From Auanema rhodensis (Eukaryota > Animalia > Nematoda): a DNA stretch of 64,000 nucleotides. Positions 4,593-38,130 of this stretch are shown here, in pieces. Where the stretch lies: positions 17,794,001 to 17,858,000 of the forward strand of contig OZ059894.1 of NCBI GenBank assembly GCA_964057225.1. Reading direction: 5' to 3'. Position 1 is the stretch's first letter. Every line of letters starts with the position of its first letter. Made by a program: the position numbers and the translations under genes. The notes beneath the pieces were generated by a model. The model saw only the letters and a list, made by a program, of their open reading frames with translations, searched no databases and was not told the origin of the DNA.

Positions 4593-7500
4593 ATGGCAGA
4601 AGATAACTATGTAAGTTTATTGGTTTAATGAACTCTTACCTACCCACATGTTCTCAATTCTATAAAACTATTCTATAATTCTAGTTAATTTATGAAAATC
4701 TACGCATATTCCGAGAGATTTCTAAAAATAGGAGTTTCATGTTGCAACATAAACAATGAAATCATTTGAAAGTACAAAAATCGTATGTTAATATGAATAT
4801 ACATATGATGAATGTACAATCTGAATCAAAAATGTGTTTGATGTGTAATGACGATATATGATAATTAATATATAAATAATTATATTTTAACTTAAATTAA
4901 AGGAAAGATCTTCATAATCTTCAAAAACTATCTAGTTTCAACTAATTGTGTTTTGTGTTTCTCTTACACTTTTTGTCAAAAACTTTGCTGATTGGACGAA
5001 AACTTCTTGAGCTGTCCGACGAAGGGATGCGACCGTCTGAAGAGTGTCAATAGCCACTGACGTTGCATCATTATAAGAAGATTCTTTTTTTCTTTCTTTG
5101 GATTAAGTAAACTTTCGTTTAATTGAAAAAAAAAACATAGTATGAGATTGAATGAATGTGTGAAGGAAGGATGGAGCAGCTGAATTGAAGTTAAATTTGG
5201 TTTATTCAGGCCCTTGTAGTAGATCCACCAGATGATGCCTTATCTATAGGAGATTATGATATTGAAACTGGACTACGTTCATCTACGAGACGTTTGATTC
5301 ATAACTTTGAAGAAGAACCTCAAAGATCTACCGCAGCAGCTTCAATAAAGAAAAGTATTCGAAGTTCTATTCGAAAAACGTAGGGTCATAGGTTATTTCT
5401 AACCCATTTTCAACGATGATTTTCACAATCTATTTCATATTTTAGAAAATATTATTGTGATCCATTAGTAAAGGCAATCAAGTATGTATTGAATAAATCA
5501 AAATTACTTATAGTTATAACTATTTATTCTGTTTTTGGGGCTTGGTTGTTTACAACATTAGAGGTATTTCAATGATATATTTCATTTTCTTTTAAATTCT
5601 TTTTAGGTTCCACATGATTTAGCTATGAAAGAAGAACAATATCATGCTAGATTAATAGCAAGAGAAGTTATGATTCTTAAGTAAATTAAATATTTTTCAA
5701 TATATTTCAACCTATTCTCAATATTTTCAGTCTTAGAGCTATTTTTTATTCTCAAAAAGAAGATCGTGAAGAAAGATGGAAAGATGCTATAAAGCAATTT
5801 GAGAAAGATTTAAGCTTAGATGAACCAAGTCTAGATACTGATTGGACGTTTTGGATGGCATTTCTGTATGCTGGAACTATTTACACGACAATTGGTTAGA
5901 TTATTCTTAAACTTATAGTAAAACTTGATATCTTTATTAAGGTTATGGTAACATTGCATGTAAAACTAAAGCAGGTCAAATAGCAACATTACTTTATGCT
6001 TTTATTGGAATACCAATTATGATTATTATTCTTAATGACTTAGGAGATTTTTTATTACATATATTGGAATGGTTAGCAAATACAACAAGTGATGGTTTAC
6101 TCTTTTTAGGTTTTTTTAAATTTTTCAATAAATAATTTTATTCAAATAAAATATAATTTAGGAGTTAGATGGGGAATGCTTACATTAGAAGAAAATTCTA
6201 AAAGAAGAAAACGTTTCTTAGCTTTTCGAGCTAAATTAGTTAAGAAAGGAATTATAAGTTCATCATCATCATTTTCAATTGAAACTGTATATTATATTAT
6301 TTATTATAATTATTATAATTATTTTTTATTTAAAGAGATCTATAACAGATTTTCAAGCAGGAAATAAACAAAATGATGAAGTGAAACCAGATCCACCAGT
6401 GTTTTCAGCTGTTTTTGGTAATTATTTTGTAATTTATTAATTAAAGTTTGAACTCAATTTTGTATTTATTTTTTCAGAAAGTAAAAGAAAAAAAGTTAAA
6501 ATACAGTAATTCATATTAAAATATTCAATAATTATTTTAATTTTTAGCAACTTTTGGTTGGATTTTCTTAGCTGCTCGTGTATTTTGTATTTGGGAAGAA
6601 TGGTCGTACTTTACTAGTATTTATTTCATTTTCATATCTTGTAGTACAATAGGTATAACATTCATTATAATTATTGATATTTATTGATTCATCATCAGGC
6701 TTGGGTGATGTTGTACCTGCACATCCAGAATACATGATTCTAGCATTTGGTGTTGTAATGGTTGGATTGTCATTGGTTACAGTATGTATCAATGTTGTTC
6801 AAGCTAAAATTGAACTCATGTATATGGAGTTGCTGCAAAAAATTTTAAAAGTAATCAAACTACTCTTCAATTTGACTAGTCTTTACAACCTTAGGATTAC
6901 ATCGCTGCAATGGAAAATGGAGATGCTAATGCTGCACAGGATATGATGGCAGGCTTCTCAGGAGCTGCCAAGTTTTTACTTCCGTTCATCAGCAAAAACC
7001 AAGGAGCTAAGGTGATGACACAGTTCAGAGAAGATTGTGTAGCTCAGGTAAAATTTTTTTTTGAGTTTTTCGACAACTATTTTCCTTTTTCTTAAGGGTA
7101 TTGAACCTCCAGCTGTATTAGTTGATATCAATCCAAATACCGGTAAACCAGCATTTGCTAGTGCTCCAAAAGAAGATTATAAAGATTATATTGAACATGT
7201 AACTATATTGTCTATATTATATATAAATTAATATATATAATTTAGGCTGATGAAAGAAGACAAGAGGAAAGAAAGGTTGAAGAATCAAGGTTATTATCAA
7301 GAGTTCCTCAATCAGAAGAACCACGCCGTCATATTACAACTCAAAGTTTAGGAATTCAAGTGAATCAATTGATAATCTTTATTTGAATAATATTTTCTTA
7401 TTCAGGCAATGATGGATTCATCACCGTTACAAGAAGTAAAGAAAGTTTCCTTGGATTTTGGACTTCAAGTTACTCCAGAATATTCTGATGAGGAATGTCA

Positions 7501-9263
7501 AACATCTGATTGTGAAAGTGTAGATGAAGGAATACAAGTATATTCATATATTATATTAATAATAAATAAAATAATTTAAGACATGGCCATCAATGGAATC
7601 TATTTCTGTACAATACGATGCAATTGAAACGATTGTAATCACTTATCTAAACTATTTATATCTTATTCATTACAATTTTTATTTTAGGATTCTGTTGCTC
7701 AATATGATATCATAGAAGAGAAACCTATTCTGTGTGATACAGCAGTTCAACCAGATGTTTCAAGCATATATCTATTTGATGAAGACTATGGATCAGATGA
7801 ATCATCAGATGATTCTCATACTGATTTCGAAGACACTGATATTGAACCACATTCCGATCATTTAACTGTAGCTGTAAGATTGTTTTAGATTATAACTTCA
7901 ACATATATCTTACTATAGGTACCGACATTCCATTCTCTTCGAAAATCAATCTCTATAGATTCTCAAGAGACTGTTATTCATGTAAGCCCTACTGGATCAC
8001 CTACGACATCGAGGAAAAAAGCTTTACAAAAACGATTATTATTAAGAAATGAAAGAAGAAAGAAACGTGAATTACGATTAGAGCATTCAAAACAAAATCT
8101 AAGATACATGAGATGTTCAGCTGTTCAAGTAAGTTGCTTGTGTGTATATTATCAAAGCTTTCTTAATAAACGGTTTTAGACCGAGATACAAACAGAAGAT
8201 TCAAACGTACAAGTGGAATATTCCACACAATCTACTGAAAGCCAGTATGACTTGATTACTAGTTGTGAGGTATTTACACAACACTTCACTGAAACAAGAG
8301 GACGGCGATGCCAAACAAAGCTAACATGGTGAATCATTTCAATGATAATTATTACCTTCATGAGGATGTACTTTCAGTCTTAGTGCATCGAATAGAACAT
8401 CCGAAAGTCATCCAAGACGTGTAAGTGCTCGACGACGCCAAGGAATTCGAAACAGTCAACAGAGATCAATTACTTCATCAACAGATGCCGTGGAATCAGT
8501 TTCATCTATGGAAGGTTTGAATCAGCAGTCATCATACTCAATCAATATTTCATTTAGATCGTTTATTCCGATCTGTATCTACAGACATCTCGAATAGAAA
8601 TTCATCAGAATCTCAATCACCTCTGTATCAAGCAATTCCTGAAGAGCATGCATATCAACATAGTTCACATCAGATGAGTCCTGATGATTACATGAATTGG
8701 GAAAACTCACAGCAGGCTGTTGTTCCATATAGTCCAGGAATTCATTTAACACAAGCAGCAGCAGGAAATATTCAAAGTCCTACTACAATGAATACTGAAA
8801 CCGGAGAAGTAGCTGAGGTTTCATTAATTTAAAATATAATTTATGAAACAAAAATATTTTTATAATTCAGATTAGTTTGAATATATCACTTGTTAGTAGA
8901 GCAGTTGATGAAAATGGTCGTTATATAGATGATTTCGATCTTGAATATGATGATGATGATGTGTTTGAATCTGACGATGATATAGCTCATGTATTTTAAT
9001 TTCAAAAATCTTTTTTTTTTAAATACAAATGTTCTATTTATAGGAAGATCTAGAAGAATTTACTGTATCCATGTCAACTCAAACAGAGTTAACACATGAA
9101 GAAATGTATAATTCAGAATTAGAAGTATTACGAAAATCATTGGAAATTGAAATAAGAGAACAGATAGAAGAACAATTAGCTGAAGAAGCTTTAAATAGTC
9201 AAGCTGATAGAATTGAATGTTCAATTCAAACTAATAGTTCATCATTTTACGCTATACAATATG

Positions 9264-9310
<47 letters not shown>

Positions 9311-12122
9311 TTATATTAAATATTTAGGCCGGATTGCCAACTATATTGGAAAGATCAATTGAAGATAATTCATCATTGTGCTCAACTCCTGATCCAACCA
9401 ATTATCATTTCTTAGCTGATAGTATATGTCAAACAAATGCTATTGATATTTCAACAAATACATGTCAGGTAATATAATATAATATAATTATATTATATTA
9501 ATTATAAATTAAAGACTGAATCTGTTTTCATTCTCGATTCTTGTCCAACTTTTGGTGATCGAGATATTCAAACTTCCTTTGATGCCGTAGATGCTGAAAT
9601 TCAAACGAATCGAGACGAAACAATCGATGATGAAACTCAAACACTTCGAGAAGAAGCTGATAATGAAACTCAGACAATCGATACAACTATGTCCGAATGT
9701 TATTGTCAAACTGATGAGGATTTGAATGTTGTTGAAACATTCAATGTTGATGTACAAACCTTTATTTCATCTTCTGATATACCAACACAAACTATTATAA
9801 CTTCATTAAATGAACAAATGGATAATGGAACTCAAGCAAATATGCTTGATTTCTCATCAAATGCTCAAATACAGACATTACTAACATATTCTGGAAATGC
9901 AACAGATATTGAGATTCAAACTGTTATATCAAATGTTTTAGGTTTTGTGACTAGAATTAGACCTTATTTTCAAAAAATATAATTGCAGATAATTCGAAAA
10001 ATATTGAAACTCAAACTTCTACTCCAGGGATTAAAGCAACATCCTCTCAAACTCCTCGTATAACACCCTTAGATAGACAAATTCAAACGGAACATCCAAG
10101 AAGAGATCAAAAACGATGTCAAACTGACGTGGTATCTTCTAATTTTTTTCATAAAAATGAGATTACAATGTTGAAATTTCAGTTTCCTCCGATTGTTGAT
10201 TGTAGAAGTTTTGCTGTTGATGCTACACCATCAGTACAAGATTCAGAAAGTCAGCCAGAAGTCAGCATGTTGACTATTTCAGAAGAAGTACAGTTGATTA
10301 TTCGAAATTCTTCTAATATTACGAATTACAGGATATTCCATGTTCACAGTTGCCACCTGATATGAGATTCAACATTGAAAGAGGAACATGCATGGAAGAA
10401 AAGCGTTTGAAATCAGTTGAATCACAAGTGTGAACATTATTGATTAAATTTTATAAAAATTGCTATTAAGAGTCCTATATTGGAAACAGAAGTTGTTGGA
10501 ATTCAAGTAATGCCTAGTCTAACTACATCTCATACTCAGTATACATATGTATCTTTGAGTGATGATTTTACTCAAACTGATATTTATATGAAATCAAAAA
10601 GTACACAGGTACCTTTCAAAGTTTTAAATTTATTTTAAAAATATTCTTAAAAACTTACAAGATAAGATATATGTATCAAAGAAAACTATTCAAATTTTGA
10701 ACCATAGGGCATATTGGCTGTTTGTGAAATGTCAGATCACGAAGCTCAAACGATGATTGAACAGCAAGACAGATATCTTGATTGTGATGATTTGAACGAT
10801 TCCGTTGGAAATATCACGAGTTCAACAGTTAATCTATGGAGTGATTTCGATAGAATAGCTGAAGGTTTACTTTGTCAAACAGATAAGGTTAATGCTGAAA
10901 GTCAAACGTATCTGGATAAAGAACAGATCGAAAAGCTTATCACCTTGCAAGTCTTGGCATCCAAGGAGATTGAAGACAGAACGGTATCAGATCTGACATA
11001 TGCAGAAAAGGATGATTCGGCTTGCAAAAGCACTCCTACAGCTTTGAAAGAAAGAAAAAAGAAACCCTCCTCTGTAACATGTGATGCCACATTAAAGGAA
11101 GTCGATGAAGCTGAGGGAGAGAAGGCAAAAACATTGCCACTTCGCAAAAAGAAGAAGAAAATAGTAAATGTTAAAAAGGAAGAAGCAGAAGTTCAAGCTG
11201 TCGTAGATACACGAACACTTGGAGTAGGTCAAGAAGGACGGGATAATTGGAGAGAGGTAGTCTATATTCCATACATGCATAGCACAGAATGAGCACAATC
11301 AGCAACTGTTAAGCACTTGCACTATATGGATGTTTCATGTACAACCACCACCACGTACATTACTTTTAGAAATTTCACCACAGAGCATGACTTCTACATC
11401 TTTTCTTTTTCTTTGGCTTGTATGGGTTAATCTATAATCCAATTATCTTTACATTTCTTATGCACAACAACTATTTCAATTTGTCATTTCATATCTTAAA
11501 TCTTGATTTAGGTTTATTTGGCTGAATTAGATCAAGAACGTCGTCAACGTATGCTTGATATTGGCATTCAAACAGGTGTTTTGGCACGGGTTCAGCATAT
11601 GTACGGAAGGCGTGATCATGGAAGTACAGAATCTGAAGTGGGAAGCAATAGACTGTTAGTAACTGATATTCGTTGTTCAGGTCTCAACAAGTGATAATCC
11701 TCGGGTGAATCTCAGAAAAACTGAATCTTCAGAGTATTTACGGTAGCTAAACAACACCATTATCGTATTATTTTGTGAATTTCAGTAGCCAAGAATCATT
11801 AGCACGCACCAATTCCGTGATGTCTATAGCGGAATCTTTTGGTGGAGATGAAAGCTCTCCAGGACCTTCTAAGCCAACATCAAGGTACATACAATATACA
11901 CATATGAATATCATAATTCAAACTAAACCTATAGATCATCATCATTCAAACGAACAAAAAGAACCCGTGATCTTCATCAAGATGCTCGAGAGCAAACTGT
12001 AGATATGAGGGATACGATCAAGATATTGAAATAATTATTTTCAGGTTGCTGATTTAAGGTCAAGATTTGAAGAATCAGATAGAAGGCCCCGACGAAACCG
12101 TTCATCTTCAAATGAAAGATGA
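4593..12122 (+). CDS. TWK-family two-pore-domain (K2P) potassium channel with a very long acidic S/T/Q-rich C-terminal tail (>30 exons)
   Basis: P1 WTFWMAFLYAGTIYTTIG|YGNIACKT and P2 WSYFTSIYFIFISCSTI|GLGDVVP, with 4 TM segments. In-frame exons continue to ...VADLRSRFEESDRRPRRNRSSSNER* (stop 12120-12122). The first mini-exon MAEDNY at 4593 is inferred. Confidence 0.88.
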
Positions 12123-12431
12123 GTTATTTCTACGACGAATAGAATACAATTTTCACGAATTTTTTATAAGAAAAATTAATAAAAAAAGGAAAAACGCTTT
12201 CAATTACTTCATATGTAAACGTATTTCCTGTGGAAATAAATCTGTTTGATTTAAATTAAACAGAGATTAAATAAAGAATTATTATTATTATTATATAAAT
12301 AAAATTATAATTATATTTACATGAGCAGAAAAAAAAATTAATAATAATATAAAATATAATAAATAGCTATATATAGATAATAGCTAAGAATAATAAAAAA
12401 TAAAAAATAATAATTTTGATTTAAACTTATT

Positions 12432-35630: not shown

Positions 35631-36394
35631 GAAGCTAAAATATAATTTTATTGTTTTTAATAACTATAATCTTCATTTCATTCATATATATCATATAATT
35701 TCTCTTAAAATTTTTTATGAAAATGAAATAAAAGTTCAATTGAACTGTTATGAAGAAATATACTTTTTTCACTTTGTTTTTGCACAATTTTTTGATTATT
35801 ATTACGATTTACAAGAGTTATGTGAAAAAATATATATTAAGATATATAATTATAATAATAATAATTATTATTATTATTTAAAATATTCATTTATAGATTC
35901 CTGAAAGTATACGAATTTGGCAACCAGATACAATAATACATAATTCTGTAACTGATATAATTCGCAAGAAATCTCTATTTCTCAGTCCTAATGGTTCTGT
36001 ACAAATGGTGGAACGACGTGATGCTGATGTAATATGTGAAACAAAGGTTCTAACATATTTTGAAAAAAAACTAATTTTAATTTGAAATTTATTTCTTCAG
36101 TGCTTACTAGCCTTCAGAAGCTTTGCTCATCGTGGTGCTGATTCAATTAGCTATCAGTTAGAATCTTTCATTCCATCAACTAATGATACTAAACAATCAA
36201 TTTCTAAGAAGATTAACAGTGAAATTTTAAATCGTTCATATTCCATATTAGTATATGAATTACATAATAAGAAAGAAACACAATATAGTTTTATAAACCC
36301 ATCTATACAAACTATTACAGAAGATTTAATGAAAATGGAAATTAATCTAAATAATAGTAATAATAGTAATAGTAATAATAACACCATATCTTGA
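35129..36394 (+). CDS. Secreted Cys-loop receptor ligand-binding-domain-only protein (Neur_chan_LBD-like, no transmembrane domain)
   Basis: Signal-peptide-like MLKKIIYCFLFITHSTLSS. pLGIC motifs YNPDSSP, INQNWIDHRL, IWQPDTIIHNS, LSPNGSV and C...CLLAFRSF. Four exons, ~246 aa, stop at 36392-36394, then AATAAA. Confidence 0.8.
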
Positions 36395-37014
36395 TTATCA
36401 GCCTTTTTAACCGATATTTATTGCTCAATTTTTGTATTTAATATGTTAAAATAAATAAATAATAATATTGAAATTCTTTAATAAACAAAACAAAAATGAA
36501 TTTTATATATTGACAACCAAAGAGATCAAAGAGAAAATTTATAATTATATAAGAATGACTTAATGAAATTGAGCAGAATTCGAAGAAAAAACAGATTGAT
36601 AAATACAAAATTTTTTTTTAAAAAATTTAAAAATAATTATACGACCCAGTTTTGTGAAGAAGACCAGTCATAAGGCAATAAGATTTGTTTTATTGAAAAA
36701 AACATATTTTTCTACGAAGACACGACTGTGAATAAACCCGCATTTTTTTGTGTTTTTTTTTGTTTCGAATGGCTTTAGAGAGAAAGAGGGAGAGAGAAAG
36801 AAGGAGGAAGGGAGAAAGAAGGAGGGAGAGAGAAAGAGGGAGAGAGAAAGAGGGAGAGACAGAGAAAACAAATTTAGCTGAGATTATTCAACAAATAACT
36901 TGATCCTAGGTTGTTACTATATGAATATGGCAATTATTCGAATCAGAGTTTTCTTGAAATTTGTCTGTTTCTTTGAAATATTCATGTTGCTTAGCCTATG
37001 TTATTCATATATTC

Positions 37015-38130
37015 TTATACTTCTACTGAGAGATAGTCAGCCGAATAGCATATCGAGGGTGTACTAGACGGTGTCGTTGATACTGTTGTTGCTGCGGATG
37101 CAGCTGCAGCTGAAGAAGTGGATGACGATAATGTTGGAGTATTTGGTATCATCGCTGAGTTGAAGGATGATGACGATGTTGAGCTAGAAGAAGAGATTCC
37201 TCCAGTTAATCCGGCTGGAGGGCTGATTGGCATCTTAATAGCTATCTCATAAGGTGGTGGAGGATTGCGGGGAATCCCACAAATCCACATATCTTCCGCG
37301 ATTGATTCACTCAACATATTTTCTGAAAGAATAAATATAAAGAATGATTAATGTATATATATATTCTCTAGAAATTTTTTTTACAGATTGATAAATGAAT
37401 AAGAACATTGTAAAATACATTTGTTCAAACAGAAATTTAATACAATTGTAAGAACATCACAAGAATTTTAATGCCCTTGTACAGACTTTTGACTATTTTT
37501 TCCATAAAAATGTTATAAACGTTTCAAAATGGTATTTGATCTTTTAAATTTAACGATTTAGAGAAACCGTAAAAACATGTTTCAAAAGCAATTCATAACT
37601 TCTATTTAGGTGTCTCTTCAAACTTGTGTAATGCTAAATCTTATATATTCAAAATAAAAATTTTTTCTTCTATTTGATAAAGACTCAAGTAACAAGTTTT
37701 TCATAAATTACAACTATAAATATATATAATTAAGTAAAAGTAAAATTATTTTGCCCTTCCATATATGTTAATCCTATCACTAATTTGTTAAATTTATTTT
37801 GTTTTTTTGGTAAATTTATTTGAAAGTTAAGCTTTTAAAAGGTTAAAACACTTACCAGCGTTATTGCTTTGTTGTTGTTGTGCCCTATCTACATATTGAC
37901 TATAAATTCGGCACCCAAAGGTGAATATGAAAACCATAAAGAAAATGCCAATAGTTAGACCGGCAGCAACACCTCCACTAACTGATGTTGAAGCTGGTTC
38001 TGAAATAGAAAATTATATAAAAGAAAATATAAAAGAAACATCTTAGAAACATACTTTCATGATAATCATTAACATAGTAACGATCCCATGTTACTGGACG
38101 AAATGAATGATATGGCCATAGTGATTGCAT
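37015..38130 (-). CDS. Small single-pass membrane protein with a PPPPY motif and S/T-rich tail
   Basis: Three exons: MQSLWPYHSFRPVTWDRYYVNDYHE|KPASTSVSGGVAAGLTIGIFFMVFIFTFGCRIYSQY...NNA|ENMLSE...CGIPRNPPPPYEIAIKMP...SVEV*. The ATG directly follows TTTCAG, so upstream exons are possible. Confidence 0.8.

What the first reader, a model, noticed from the sequence alone, without database searches (positions are those of the whole stretch)
7330..11580. K2P channel tail carrying about 30 TQT-like motifs: candidate multivalent LC8/DLC-1 scaffold on an ion channel
Seen: after TM4 the channel continues for roughly 1000 or more acidic, low-complexity residues with a regularly recurring x-x-[T/I/C/V/S]-Q-T motif. 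Examples are EECQTS, DEGIQT, SAVQTEIQTE, SMSTQTE, ECSIQTN, DSICQTN, AEIQTN, DETQTL, NETQTI, CYCQTD, VDVQTF, DIPTQTI, DNGTQAN, AQIQTL, DIEIQTV, NIETQTS, ATSSQTP, DRQIQTE, DDFTQTD, HEAQTM, LLCQTD, AESQTY and DIGIQTG. Several exon ends fall exactly at the Q. Established: TQT/IQT/GIQV motifs in disordered regions bind the LC8 dynein light chain hub, and multivalent arrays occur in ASCIZ, Nup159 and Chica/FAM83D. Inference: K2P channels are dimers, so LC8 could zip the two tails into a rigid ladder that acts as a ruler, tether or LC8-dose sensor. I do not know of such an array described on a K+ channel.
Basis: partly seen in the sequence, partly recalled or inferred. Interest (0 to 1): 0.8.

Follow-up and report, generated by a model that had tools for sequence, protein, structure and literature searches.

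The report
K+ leak channel with periodic LC8-like tail
A nematode potassium leak channel (the counterpart of the unstudied C. elegans gene twk-11) has a 1,300-residue disordered tail with about 28 conserved "x-Q-T" motifs, many exactly 12 residues apart, that look like docking sites for the dimeric hub protein LC8, which could zip the channel's two tails into a long rod; binding itself has not been tested.

Summary

**Gene model.** Spliced transcript contigs and an open 33-exon model (5210-12122, + strand) show one gene. It has a two-pore K+ channel core followed by a 1,287-residue acidic tail (net charge -101).

**Motif count.** The tail has 28 QT dipeptides against 7.5 expected. Of these, 27 have T/I/V/C/S/A before the Q, against 3 expected (z about 14).

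**Orthology.** The gene belongs to the TWK-11 group of nematode K2P channels. I found no functional study of it in the held open-access library.

**Conservation of the enrichment.**
- It recurs in every orthologue I examined from Caenorhabditis, Necator, Panagrellus, Panagrolaimus, Halicephalobus, Steinernema, Strongyloides and Parastrongyloides.
- Within Caenorhabditis the motif Q and T are conserved at 0.93 and 0.87, while the flanks score 0.4-0.75.
- The gap between successive motifs peaks sharply at 12 residues. That equals an 8-residue motif plus a 4-residue linker, as in the LC8 rod-formers Nup159 and KANK1.

**Fit to LC8.** The flanks fit published LC8 rules: D/N at -4, D/E at +2, no proline before the anchor. 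Many sites resemble ASCIZ/ATMIN sites.

**Against.**
- There are no binding data, and LC8Pred was not run.
- C-Q-T, the most enriched anchor type, has no validated precedent.
- There is no preference for large residues at -3.
- The most conserved block (GIQTGVLARVQH) is predicted to be a helix.

**Verdict.** It is probably (about 0.6) a very large multivalent LC8 client on an ion channel, a new variant of a known kind. The scan's earlier notes hold no finding like it.

The parts
5210..6850 (+). K2P channel core, exons 1-9 of my model (residues 1-386). The 5' end with the start codon was not found. Selectivity filters: TIGYG at 5888-5894 plus 5942-5949, and TIGLGD at 6646-6652 plus 6699-6709.
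   Evidence: Pfam Ion_trans_2 matches the P1 exon (37.4 bits, cut-off 22.5) and the P2 exon (18.9 bits, below the cut-off for this 50-residue fragment). The core is 54-61% identical to TWK-11-group orthologues. Splice sites were read by eye and checked for GT/AG.
6895..7198 (+). Conserved proximal cytoplasmic region just after TM4 (exons 10-11, residues 387-471). It carries no QT motif.
   Evidence: Joints 6850|6895 and 7047|7097 are seen in transcript contigs. The region aligns with all orthologues. It has no Pfam match.
7246..12122 (+). Disordered acidic tail, exons 12-33 (residues 472-1673), carrying all 28 QT motifs. The stop codon is at 12120-12122.
   Evidence: The frame is open across all exons. 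Transcript contigs carry GT..AG joints with introns of 43-55 nt and one of 255 nt. Charge and hydropathy place it on the disordered side. No Pfam match on the six tail exons scanned.
9328..10131 (+). Dense periodic array, exons 22-24. It has 15 QT anchors plus one TQA variant between residues 1033 and 1232. Gaps between QT anchors are 12, 19, 11, 12, 11, 12, 16, 11, 28, 15, 16, 12, 12 and 12; the TQA site splits the 28 into 15 and 13.
   Evidence: One transcript contig spans exons 22-27 (X4 record 19). Flanks of the units are only 9% identical to one another against 7.6% for random 12-mers. AlphaFold2 without an alignment gives no confident fold (mean pLDDT 47).
9590..9681 (+). The only residual DNA tandem repeat in the array: period 36 nt (12 residues), 2.7 copies, 77% matches.
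7520..7592 (+). Motif DEGIQ|TW split by a 43-nt intron (7538-7580). Two other Q|T split junctions lie at 8128|8180 and 9468|9515.
   Evidence: The 8128|8180 junction is contiguous within one transcript contig (X1 record 2). The 9468|9515 junction fits the 8 unplaced letters in X4 record 19. The 7537|7581 junction is inferred.
8303..8326 (+). Positionally conserved single site of basic type, RGRRCQTK (residues 745-752). The family pattern is [KR][KR][CS]-Q-T-[KR]-L.
   Evidence: It sits at the same relative place in Caenorhabditis, Necator, Diploscapter, Steinernema, Strongyloides and Parastrongyloides.
10708..11256 (+). Exon 28 (183 residues, 3 QT motifs, conserved WSDFD island). It is probably a cassette exon.
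   Evidence: The equivalent 228-residue segment is present only in the 1,720-residue C. elegans isoform and absent from the 1,492-residue one and from the Necator protein. Transcript contigs here include it and join it to exon 29 (joint 11256|11512). Its upstream junction 10608|10708 is inferred.
11512..11637 (+). Distal conserved block (exon 29). GIQTG lies at 11563-11577 and GIQTGVLARVQH is nearly invariant in the family.
   Evidence: Ten invariant and three nearly invariant columns in 18 sequences. AlphaFold2 with that alignment predicts one helix over residues 2-31 with pLDDT about 90. The 8-mer LDIGIQTG resembles validated LC8 sites of 53BP1, DLGAP1 and nNOS.

Best explanation
The gene encodes the orthologue of the nematode two-pore-domain K+ channel TWK-11. 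Its long cytoplasmic C-terminal tail is an intrinsically disordered, multivalent client of the dimeric hub protein LC8 (DLC-1 in worms).

How it would work. K2P channels are obligate dimers (established knowledge), so two identical tails leave the membrane side by side and in register. Each x-[T/I/V/S/C]-Q-T-x site would lie as a beta-strand in one groove of an LC8 dimer, and the same site on the sister tail would fill the other groove. In the dense stretch (residues 1033-1232 here) the sites are 11-16 residues apart, most often 12. That is an 8-residue motif plus a linker of about 4 residues. Neighbouring LC8 dimers would therefore stack into a stiff duplex ladder. By analogy with KANK1-L2 (220 residues, at least 15 LC8 dimers, more than 50 nm) this stretch would reach about 50 nm. 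The rod would hold the conserved distal modules (WSDFD, the GIQTGVLARVQH helix) at a set distance from the pore. The likely purpose is to tether or cluster the channel rather than to gate it.

Shown here: the gene model and its transcription, the enrichment, the conservation, the flank preferences and the spacing.

Inferred: LC8 binding, rod formation and any cellular role.
For: One transcript.
- Spliced contigs link the TM4 exon to the tail and run through exons 16-21, 22-27 and 28-33.
- The open 33-exon model is collinear with full-length orthologues.

Enrichment.
- 27 [TIVCSA]QT against 3.0 +/- 1.7 expected.
- The same holds in 13 other orthologues, with z from 5.5 to 15.8.

Conservation.
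- In seven Caenorhabditis proteins the motif Q and T are conserved at 0.93 and 0.87. Flanks score 0.38-0.75 and other tail Q or T residues 0.63.
- 21-27 of 29 C. elegans sites are retained.

Not a young repeat.
- Unit flanks are 9% identical against 7.6% at random.
- There is one decayed 36-nt repeat.

Flanks. In 218 instances from 10 species, chosen only by 'QT':
- D is 3.8x and N 3.2x enriched at -4, and K, R and L are depleted there.
- D is 3.0x and E 2.4x enriched at +2.
- Position -1 takes C, I, M, V, T or S, and charged residues are depleted.
- Proline is nearly absent from -5 to -1.
- Against background positions: -4 polar 78% vs 47%, +2 D/E/P 46% vs 23%, no pre-anchor proline 97% vs 79% (P from 1e-12 to 1e-20).
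- These are the preferences published for LC8 (PMC6607443 section 9; consensus in PMC3078936).

Resemblance to validated sites.
- 21 of the window's 29 anchors (QT and QV) use a triplet found among the 79 validated binders: TQT, IQT, VQT, SQT, IQV or VQV.
- Several 8-mers match ATMIN/ASCIZ, RSP3, Mokola virus P or 53BP1 sites at 5-6 of 8 positions.

Spacing.
- 51 gaps of exactly 12 and 16 of 11, with smaller peaks at 23-25, 27 and 36, and few gaps below 11, across 11 proteins.
- Nup159 has 4-5-residue linkers and KANK1 3-4-residue linkers, and both form LC8 rods.

Disorder. Charge and hydropathy and low-confidence AlphaFold2.

Precedent. LC8 is an auxiliary subunit of Kir4.1 through one TQT site.
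Against: - There is no binding evidence of any kind. LC8Pred and AlphaFold-multimer could not be run here.
- The most enriched -1 residue is Cys (10x). C-Q-T (7 sites in the window), M-Q-T and A-Q-T do not occur among the 79 validated binders.
- Position -3 shows no preference for large or basic residues (53% vs 55%), unlike many strong binders. ASCIZ/ATMIN sites share this feature.
- Under my strictest reading of the published rules only 16 of 29 window anchors pass, mostly because +2 is hydrophobic.
- Several sites have three acidic residues before the anchor. Peptides of that kind are among the published non-binders.
- Some published non-binders look much like these motifs, so resemblance alone has limited predictive value.
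- The most conserved block, GIQTGVLARVQH, is predicted as a continuous helix with a G-x-x-x-G spacing. That fits helix packing better than a beta-strand site.
- The array lies about 650 residues from TM4, so an effect on gating is not obvious.
Confidence: 0.6

Rival explanations
1. The periodic [D/N]-x-x-hydrophobic-Q-T-[D/E] motif is a real short linear motif, but for something other than LC8. Candidates are a nematode-specific scaffold protein or a modifying enzyme acting on the Thr, or on the frequent Cys at -1.
For: C-Q-T and M-Q-T anchors are common in the family but absent from the validated LC8 binders. There is no -3 preference for large residues. The related conserved island G-I-Q-P-E-V-S has Pro at +1, which LC8 should not accept, yet it is among the most conserved tail elements. 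That hints at a reader of 'G-I-Q' that is not LC8.
Against: I know of no other hub with a Q-T-centred motif. The independent agreement at -4, -1, +1, +2 and in proline avoidance with LC8 rules would then be coincidence. A 12-residue period is what stacked LC8 dimers need. There is no acidic enrichment three residues after the Thr, so a CK2-type site is not supported.
Confidence: 0.2
2. The tail acts by its bulk properties, as a long acidic entropic spacer or a self-associating repeat. The Q-T periodicity would then be a structural repeat of the tail itself, with no partner.
For: The tail has net charge -101 and is disordered along most of its length. Single-sequence AlphaFold2 draws low-confidence helices through the array. 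The distal block is confidently helical.
Against: A pure spacer does not need two invariant residues every 12 positions with free flanks. A 12-residue period is not an integral number of helical turns and is not the 11-residue period of lipid-binding amphipathic helices (my knowledge). No confident fold is predicted for the array.
Confidence: 0.1
3. The motifs are a neutral by-product of tandem duplication and biased composition in a fast-evolving low-complexity tail.
For: A decayed 36-nt repeat is present at 9590-9681. Obvious longer repeats exist in some orthologues, such as 24-residue units in C. nigoni and 27-residue units in Panagrolaimus.
Against: Anchors are conserved well above their flanks and above other Q and T residues. 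The enrichment is present in lineages as distant as Strongyloides and Caenorhabditis. Flanks in the window are no more alike than random. Shuffles that keep composition never approach the observed counts: the maximum is 10 against 27 observed.
Confidence: 0.04

Closest known systems
ASCIZ/ATMIN (transcription factor with 7-11 LC8 sites)
   Same: A disordered region carries many Q-T-anchored sites. The site class is the same, x-D-[I/V/T]-E-T-Q-T-[D/E], with E or G at -2 and non-basic -3. Window 8-mers such as KNIETQTS, TDIEIQTV and ADNETQTI match ATMIN sites at 5 of 8 positions.
   Different: ASCIZ is a nuclear zinc-finger protein. Its sites are 20-36 or more residues apart (Q positions) and bind heterogeneously. 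Here the array sits on a membrane channel, has two to three times as many anchors, and has a strict 12-residue period.
Nup159 DID and KANK1-L2 (LC8 'beads on a string' rods)
   Same: Linkers between sites are short and uniform: 4-5 residues in Nup159, 3-4 in KANK1, and about 3-4 here, inferred from 11-12-residue anchor gaps. KANK1-L2 is also anchored at the cell cortex, and with at least 15 LC8 dimers it turns 220 disordered residues into a rod of more than 50 nm.
   Different: KANK1 sites are non-canonical and individually too weak to detect. Here about two thirds of anchors use validated triplets. Rod formation is demonstrated for those proteins and only inferred here. The carrier here is an ion channel that is already a dimer.
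Kir4.1 N-terminal TQT site (LC8 as an auxiliary subunit of a K+ channel)
   Same: A K+ channel has an LC8 site in an unstructured cytoplasmic extension, and the site is conserved among orthologues.
   Different: Kir4.1 has one site on the N-terminus of a tetrameric inward rectifier. Here there are about 28 sites on the C-terminal tail of a dimeric K2P. Binding is demonstrated for Kir4.1 and not here.
C. elegans TWK-11 and its orthologues (nematode K2P subfamily)
   Same: They share the core, the proximal domain, the conserved tail islands, the QT array and the alternatively spliced cassette.
   Different: The window's protein is only 41-61% identical in the core region and about 30-45% in the alignable tail pieces. 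Its +2 positions are more often hydrophobic than the D/E of Caenorhabditis.

Membership tests
Two-pore-domain K+ channel (K2P/TWK) | Two pore-loop domains per subunit, each with a K+ selectivity filter sequence. | tested here: met
   TIGYG and TIGLGD are present in the model. Pfam Ion_trans_2 matches both pore exons. P1 is above the cut-off. P2, a 50-residue fragment, scores 18.9 against 22.5 bits.
Two-pore-domain K+ channel (K2P/TWK) | Four transmembrane segments and assembly as a dimer. | not tested
   The hydrophobic stretches are visible in the model and align with K2P orthologues. Topology and dimerisation are taken from established knowledge of the family.
TWK-11 orthogroup | Best matches are TWK-11-group proteins over the core and over collinear tail islands. 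| tested here: met
   The top local BLAST hits are Necator, Caenorhabditis (including CRE-TWK-11) and Diploscapter proteins, with matches in the core, mid-tail and C-terminus. The islands are listed. No tree was built and no reciprocal search against a whole proteome was run.
LC8 (DYNLL/DLC-1) client | An 8-residue motif anchored by [T/V/I]-Q-[T/V], with no charged residue at -1 or +1. | tested here: met
   21 of 29 window anchors use triplets found in validated binders. 7 are C-Q-T and 1 is A-Q-T, which have no precedent. Charged residues are depleted at -1.
LC8 (DYNLL/DLC-1) client | Flank preferences: a polar residue or D at -4, P/D/E at +2, no internal proline, no aromatic at -2. | tested here: met
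   All are enriched over background in 214 family sites, following the rules. Within the window alone, +2 is hydrophobic in 11 of 29 anchors.
LC8 (DYNLL/DLC-1) client | A large, often basic, side chain at -3. | tested here: not met
   53% at anchors against 55% in the background. The paper calls a small -3 residue less favourable, not excluding. ASCIZ/ATMIN sites also lack K/R at -3.
LC8 (DYNLL/DLC-1) client | The motif lies in an intrinsically disordered region. | tested here: inconclusive
   Charge and hydropathy put most of the tail on the disordered side. The array has mean pLDDT 47, but a single-sequence prediction is weak evidence. The distal GIQTG block is predicted helical.
LC8 (DYNLL/DLC-1) client | Physical, motif-dependent binding to LC8. 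| not testable with these tools
   No multimer prediction and no experiment is available here. No paper in the held library links DLC-1 with any TWK channel.
LC8 rod-forming multivalent client (Nup159/KANK1 type) | Several adjacent sites separated by short, uniform linkers of about 3-5 residues. | tested here: met
   Anchor gaps peak at 12 (51 cases) and 11 (16 cases) across 11 proteins. The window has eight gaps of 11-12 in the array.

The most novel reading that the evidence does not exclude
The paired tails of the TWK-11 channel dimer recruit 15-30 LC8 dimers and become a duplex rod of 50 nm or more. That would be the largest LC8 assembly known and the first built on an ion channel. The rod would act as a membrane-anchored ruler or tether, placing the invariant distal helix (GIQTGVLARVQH) and the WSDFD island at a fixed distance from the pore. 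Its length would be tunable through the alternatively spliced cassette and through LC8 availability.
Probability: 0.35. Interest if true: 0.85.

Novelty: new variant of a known kind. Interest (0 to 1): 0.72.

Why it matters
- K2P leak channels set resting potential, yet how most of the 46 or so worm K2Ps are positioned in the membrane is unknown. I found no functional study of twk-11 in the held open-access library.
- If the prediction holds, TWK-11 would be the most multivalent LC8 client known. It has 28-36 anchors, against at least 15 in KANK1 and 11 in ATMIN.
- It would also be the first case where a protein that is already a dimer in the membrane presents two in-register tails to LC8.
- It would offer a genetically tractable system (C. 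elegans twk-11 and dlc-1) for open questions about LC8: how linker length and site strength set cooperativity, and whether cells use LC8 rods as spacers.
- The strict 12-residue period, kept across distant nematodes while the linker sequences drift, is a natural experiment on the minimal spacing of stacked LC8 dimers.
- Strongylid and Strongyloides parasites carry the gene, so a nematode-specific channel accessory structure may also interest anthelmintic research.

Tried and rejected
- **Pfam on six tail exons and one post-TM4 exon.** No credible family.
- **PDB sequence searches.** The array exon gave nothing. The profile of the distal block gave only a chance 10-residue match to a plant isochorismate synthase.
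- **ESM Atlas look-alikes of the array exon.** No usable hit.
- **LC8Pred-like scoring matrix.** I did not build one from the 111 peptides of Table S4, because that meant typing much sequence text into a script. I applied the paper's written positional rules instead and compared by eye with the table.
- **My 'hard' rule against hydrophobic +2.** It proved too strict: 7 validated binders have L, I, F, M or V there. Relaxing it, and accepting C at -4 (two binders have it), about 18 of 29 window anchors pass by my hand count.
- **Recent tandem duplication as the source of the periodicity.** Rejected.
- **CK2-type or S/T-Q kinase sites.** Rejected. The conserved pair is Q-T rather than [S/T]-Q, and there is no acidic enrichment three residues after the Thr.
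- **Start codon.** Not found. By comparison with orthologues a few N-terminal residues are missing upstream of 5210.
- **Earlier scan notes.** Nothing bears on this locus.

Full report
**1. What is in the sequence**

The region is an AT-rich animal gene with very short introns. I translated the three + strand frames, read the DNA and assembled exons by GT/AG sites and frame.

Four public runs from one study hold the stretch as contigs that skip GT..AG introns of 43-55 nt and one of 255 nt, so they are transcript assemblies. Their joints fix most tail junctions:
- The joint 6850|6895 links the TM4 exon to the first tail exon.
- Single contigs run through exons 16-21 (7919-9257), 22-27 (9328-10601) and 28-33 (about 11100-12150).

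The resulting 33-exon model (5210-12122) is open for 1,673 residues and ends in a stop. Junctions 11>12>13>14>15, 21>22 (a TA microsatellite in the intron cut the contigs) and 27>28 are not bridged by the contigs shown. They rest on frame, splice sites and collinearity with orthologues. The start codon was not found. By comparison with orthologues a few N-terminal residues are missing.

**2. The channel**

Residues 1-386 hold two pore loops (TIGYG, TIGLGD) that match Pfam Ion_trans_2.

An exhaustive search with the 55-residue P1/TM2 exon found K2P proteins. Several were 1,100-2,300 residues long. A follow-up search named them:
- CRE-TWK-11 in C. remanei.
- A C. elegans 'TWiK family of potassium channels' protein with isoforms of 1,492, 1,720 and 1,375 residues.
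- Orthologues in Necator, Diploscapter, Panagrellus, Panagrolaimus, Halicephalobus, Steinernema, Strongyloides and Parastrongyloides.

The window's protein matches these in the core (41-61% identity), in mid-tail islands and at the C-terminus. I therefore call it the TWK-11 orthologue of an unnamed nematode. No tree was built.

Only two papers in the held library mention twk-11, both in passing.

**3.

- The tail is 1,287 residues with net charge -101.
- It has 28 QT against 7.5 +/- 2.5 in composition-preserving shuffles.
- It has 27 [TIVCSA]QT against 3.0 +/- 1.7, and the maximum in 5,000 shuffles was 10.
- One third of all tail glutamines are followed by Thr.
- In a six-frame scan of the 64-kb window, half of all matches to [DNSTEQ]-x-x-[TIVCSM]-Q-T fall in this gene.
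- Seven of 19 phase-0 tail exon ends are Q, and three introns split a motif between Q and T. CAG|GT fits the usual donor context, but four of the seven are CAA, so this stays a curiosity.

**4. The array is under selection**

- The enrichment is present in all 13 other orthologues examined from clades IV and V, with z from 5.5 to 15.8 for [TIVCSAM]QT.
- It is weak in Heterodera and absent in a Gnathostoma protein of uncertain orthology.
- TWK-31-like paralogues show only a mild excess.
- In an alignment of seven Caenorhabditis proteins, the Q and T of the 29 C. elegans motifs are conserved at 0.93 and 0.87. Positions -8 to +7 around them score 0.38-0.75, and other tail Q and T residues score 0.63.
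- In the window the 15 array units share only 9% identity outside the anchor, against 7.6% for random 12-mers.
- Only one decayed 36-nt repeat survives at the DNA level.

What is preserved is therefore the anchor and its spacing, not a repeat unit.

**5. The spacing**

Across 11 proteins the gap between successive anchors is exactly 12 residues in 51 cases and 11 in 16. Smaller peaks lie at 23-25, 27 and 36, and few gaps fall below 11.

The period recurs in Caenorhabditis, Panagrellus, Strongyloides, Parastrongyloides, Steinernema and the window, although the linker sequences are unrelated.

An LC8 site occupies 8 residues, so a 12-residue period leaves a 4-residue linker. The KANK1 preprint states that Nup159 has 4-5-residue linkers and KANK1-L2 has 3-4-residue linkers. 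It also states that such short, uniform linkers drive cooperative rod formation, with at least 15 LC8 dimers on 220 residues spanning more than 50 nm. ASCIZ/ATMIN sites are 20-36 or more residues apart (Q positions).

**6. Do the sites look like LC8 sites?**

I collected 218 instances from 10 species using only 'QT' as the criterion and looked at the flanks.

| Position | Finding |
|---|---|
| -4 | D 3.8x and N 3.2x enriched; K, R and L depleted |
| -2 | G 3.4x and E 1.9x enriched |
| -1 | C, I, M, V, T, S; charged residues, G, P and L depleted |
| +2 | D 3.0x and E 2.4x enriched |
| -5 to -1 | proline almost absent |

The published rules are: a mid-sized uncharged residue at -1 and +1, Q at 0, P/D/E at +2, a polar residue (often D) at -4 with nothing hydrophobic larger than Ala, no aromatic at -2, a large residue at -3, and no internal proline (PMC6607443 section 9). 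The earlier consensus is [D/S]-K-x-[T/V/I]-Q-[T/V]-[D/E] (PMC3078936).

Against background positions of the same tails:

| Rule | At anchors | Background | P |
|---|---|---|---|
| -4 polar | 78% | 47% | 3e-20 |
| +2 D/E/P | 46% | 23% | 6e-13 |
| no pre-anchor proline | 97% | 79% | 1e-13 |
| -3 large | 53% | 55% | not significant |

The -3 rule is not met.

The table of 79 validated binders shows that TQT, IQT, VQT, SQT, IQV and VQV anchors all bind. It also shows that ASCIZ/ATMIN sites have the same non-basic -3 and E-rich -2 as this family. Window sites such as KNIETQTS, TDIEIQTV, ADNETQTI, LDRQIQTE, VSMSTQTE and LDIGIQTG match validated sites at 5-6 of 8 positions.

Cautions:
- C-Q-T (seven window sites; Cys is 10x enriched at -1 in the family), M-Q-T and A-Q-T have no validated precedent.
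- Published non-binders include peptides that look similar.
- Highly acidic pre-anchor stretches are unfavourable.
- In this species +2 is often hydrophobic.
- By my strict rules 16 of 29 window anchors pass. With +2 relaxed, since seven binders have a hydrophobic +2, and with C accepted at -4 as in two binders, about 18 pass by my hand count.

**7. Disorder and other tail elements**

Most 100-residue windows of the tail fall on the disordered side of the charge-hydropathy line. AlphaFold2 gives the array exon a mean pLDDT of 47. This is weak evidence, because the prediction used a single sequence.

Collinear conserved islands exist:
- G-[IV]-Q-P-[ED]-V-S. Pro at +1 makes it unlikely to be an LC8 site.
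- LRF[LM]K..G.Q[TAV].
- A basic site [KR][KR][CS]-Q-T-[KR]-L.
- WSDFD.
- The distal D-[IV]-GIQTGVLARVQH, which has ten invariant columns in 18 sequences.

With that alignment AlphaFold2 predicts the distal block as one helix, residues 2-31 of exon 29, with pLDDT about 90. The two invariant glycines are four residues apart. For this block a packing helix is at least as likely as an LC8 site, even though its 8-mer resembles the sites of 53BP1, DLGAP1 and nNOS.

Exon 28 corresponds to a 228-residue cassette present only in the longest C. elegans isoform. Part of the tail is therefore alternatively spliced. The main array is constitutive in the three worm isoforms.

**8. Mechanism proposed**

K2P channels are dimers with cytoplasmic C-termini (established knowledge). 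Two identical tails therefore start side by side and in register, which is the geometry LC8 dimers use when they bridge two client chains.

I propose that DLC-1/LC8 dimers bind the paired sites. In the 12-residue-period stretch (15 QT anchors plus one TQA variant within 200 residues here) they would stack into a stiff ladder of roughly 50 nm, by analogy with KANK1. This would convert a floppy acidic tail into a spacer that presents the distal conserved modules away from the membrane.

The gene, transcript, enrichment, conservation, flanks and spacing are shown. Binding, rod formation and role are inferred. I put the LC8-client reading at about 0.6 and full rod formation at about 0.35.

**9. 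Rivals**

- Another reader of the motif, about 0.2. It is favoured by the Cys-rich -1 position and the G-I-Q-P island.
- A partner-free structural or entropic role, about 0.1.
- A neutral repeat relic, about 0.04. It is contradicted.

**10. Novelty**

Multivalent LC8 clients are known: ASCIZ, Nup159, Chica, RSP3 and KANK1. One K+ channel, Kir4.1, has a single validated site.

I found no paper that links LC8/DLC-1 with a K2P channel or describes an array on any channel. This is a new variant of a known kind.

Noticed in passing
window 7537|7581, 8128|8180, 9468|9515, and exon ends at 7047, 7359, 10427, 10608: Seven of 19 phase-0 exon ends in the tail are glutamine codons (binomial P = 1.5e-4), and three introns sit exactly between the Q and the T of a motif. 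Four of the seven are CAA, so the usual CAG|GT donor context explains only part of it.
   Followed up: partly
window 10708-11256 (exon 28): This exon corresponds to a 228-residue cassette found only in the 1,720-residue C. elegans isoform and missing from the Necator protein. Here it is included in the transcript contigs.
   Followed up: partly
P0197, P0185, P0176 (TWK-31-like paralogues from C. elegans, C. briggsae, S. papillosus): A second long-tailed K2P subfamily also has a mild QT excess (z 3-5). It carries a conserved distal element, I-V-Q-T-D-D-S-Y-L-K-I-A-R-R-L, that resembles the TWK-11 block I-Q-T-G-V-L-A-R-V. It may be a shared 'Q-T then L-A-R' module.
   Followed up: no
window 7757-7777 (residues 595-601, V-Q-P-D-V-S-S): The island [GA]-[IV]-Q-P-[ED]-V-S-[SY]-I, followed by an acidic Ser-rich run, is conserved in nearly every orthologue, including Heterodera. 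Pro at +1 makes it an unlikely LC8 site. Its function is unknown.
   Followed up: no
window 11257-11511: This intron is 255 nt, while almost all others in the gene are 43-66 nt (one is 130 nt at 6418-6547). The reading frame of exon 28 runs on for 11 codons into it before a stop, so intron retention would give a truncated tail lacking the distal helix.
   Followed up: no
window 9268-9316: A (TA)n microsatellite of about 24 copies fills most of the intron between exons 21 and 22. It is where the transcript contigs were cut.
   Followed up: no
window 36000-38000, + strand: Three matches to [DNSTEQ]-x-x-[TIVCSM]-Q-T in the six-frame scan fall in this 2-kb bin, the only bin outside the channel gene with more than two. 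I did not examine it.
   Followed up: no
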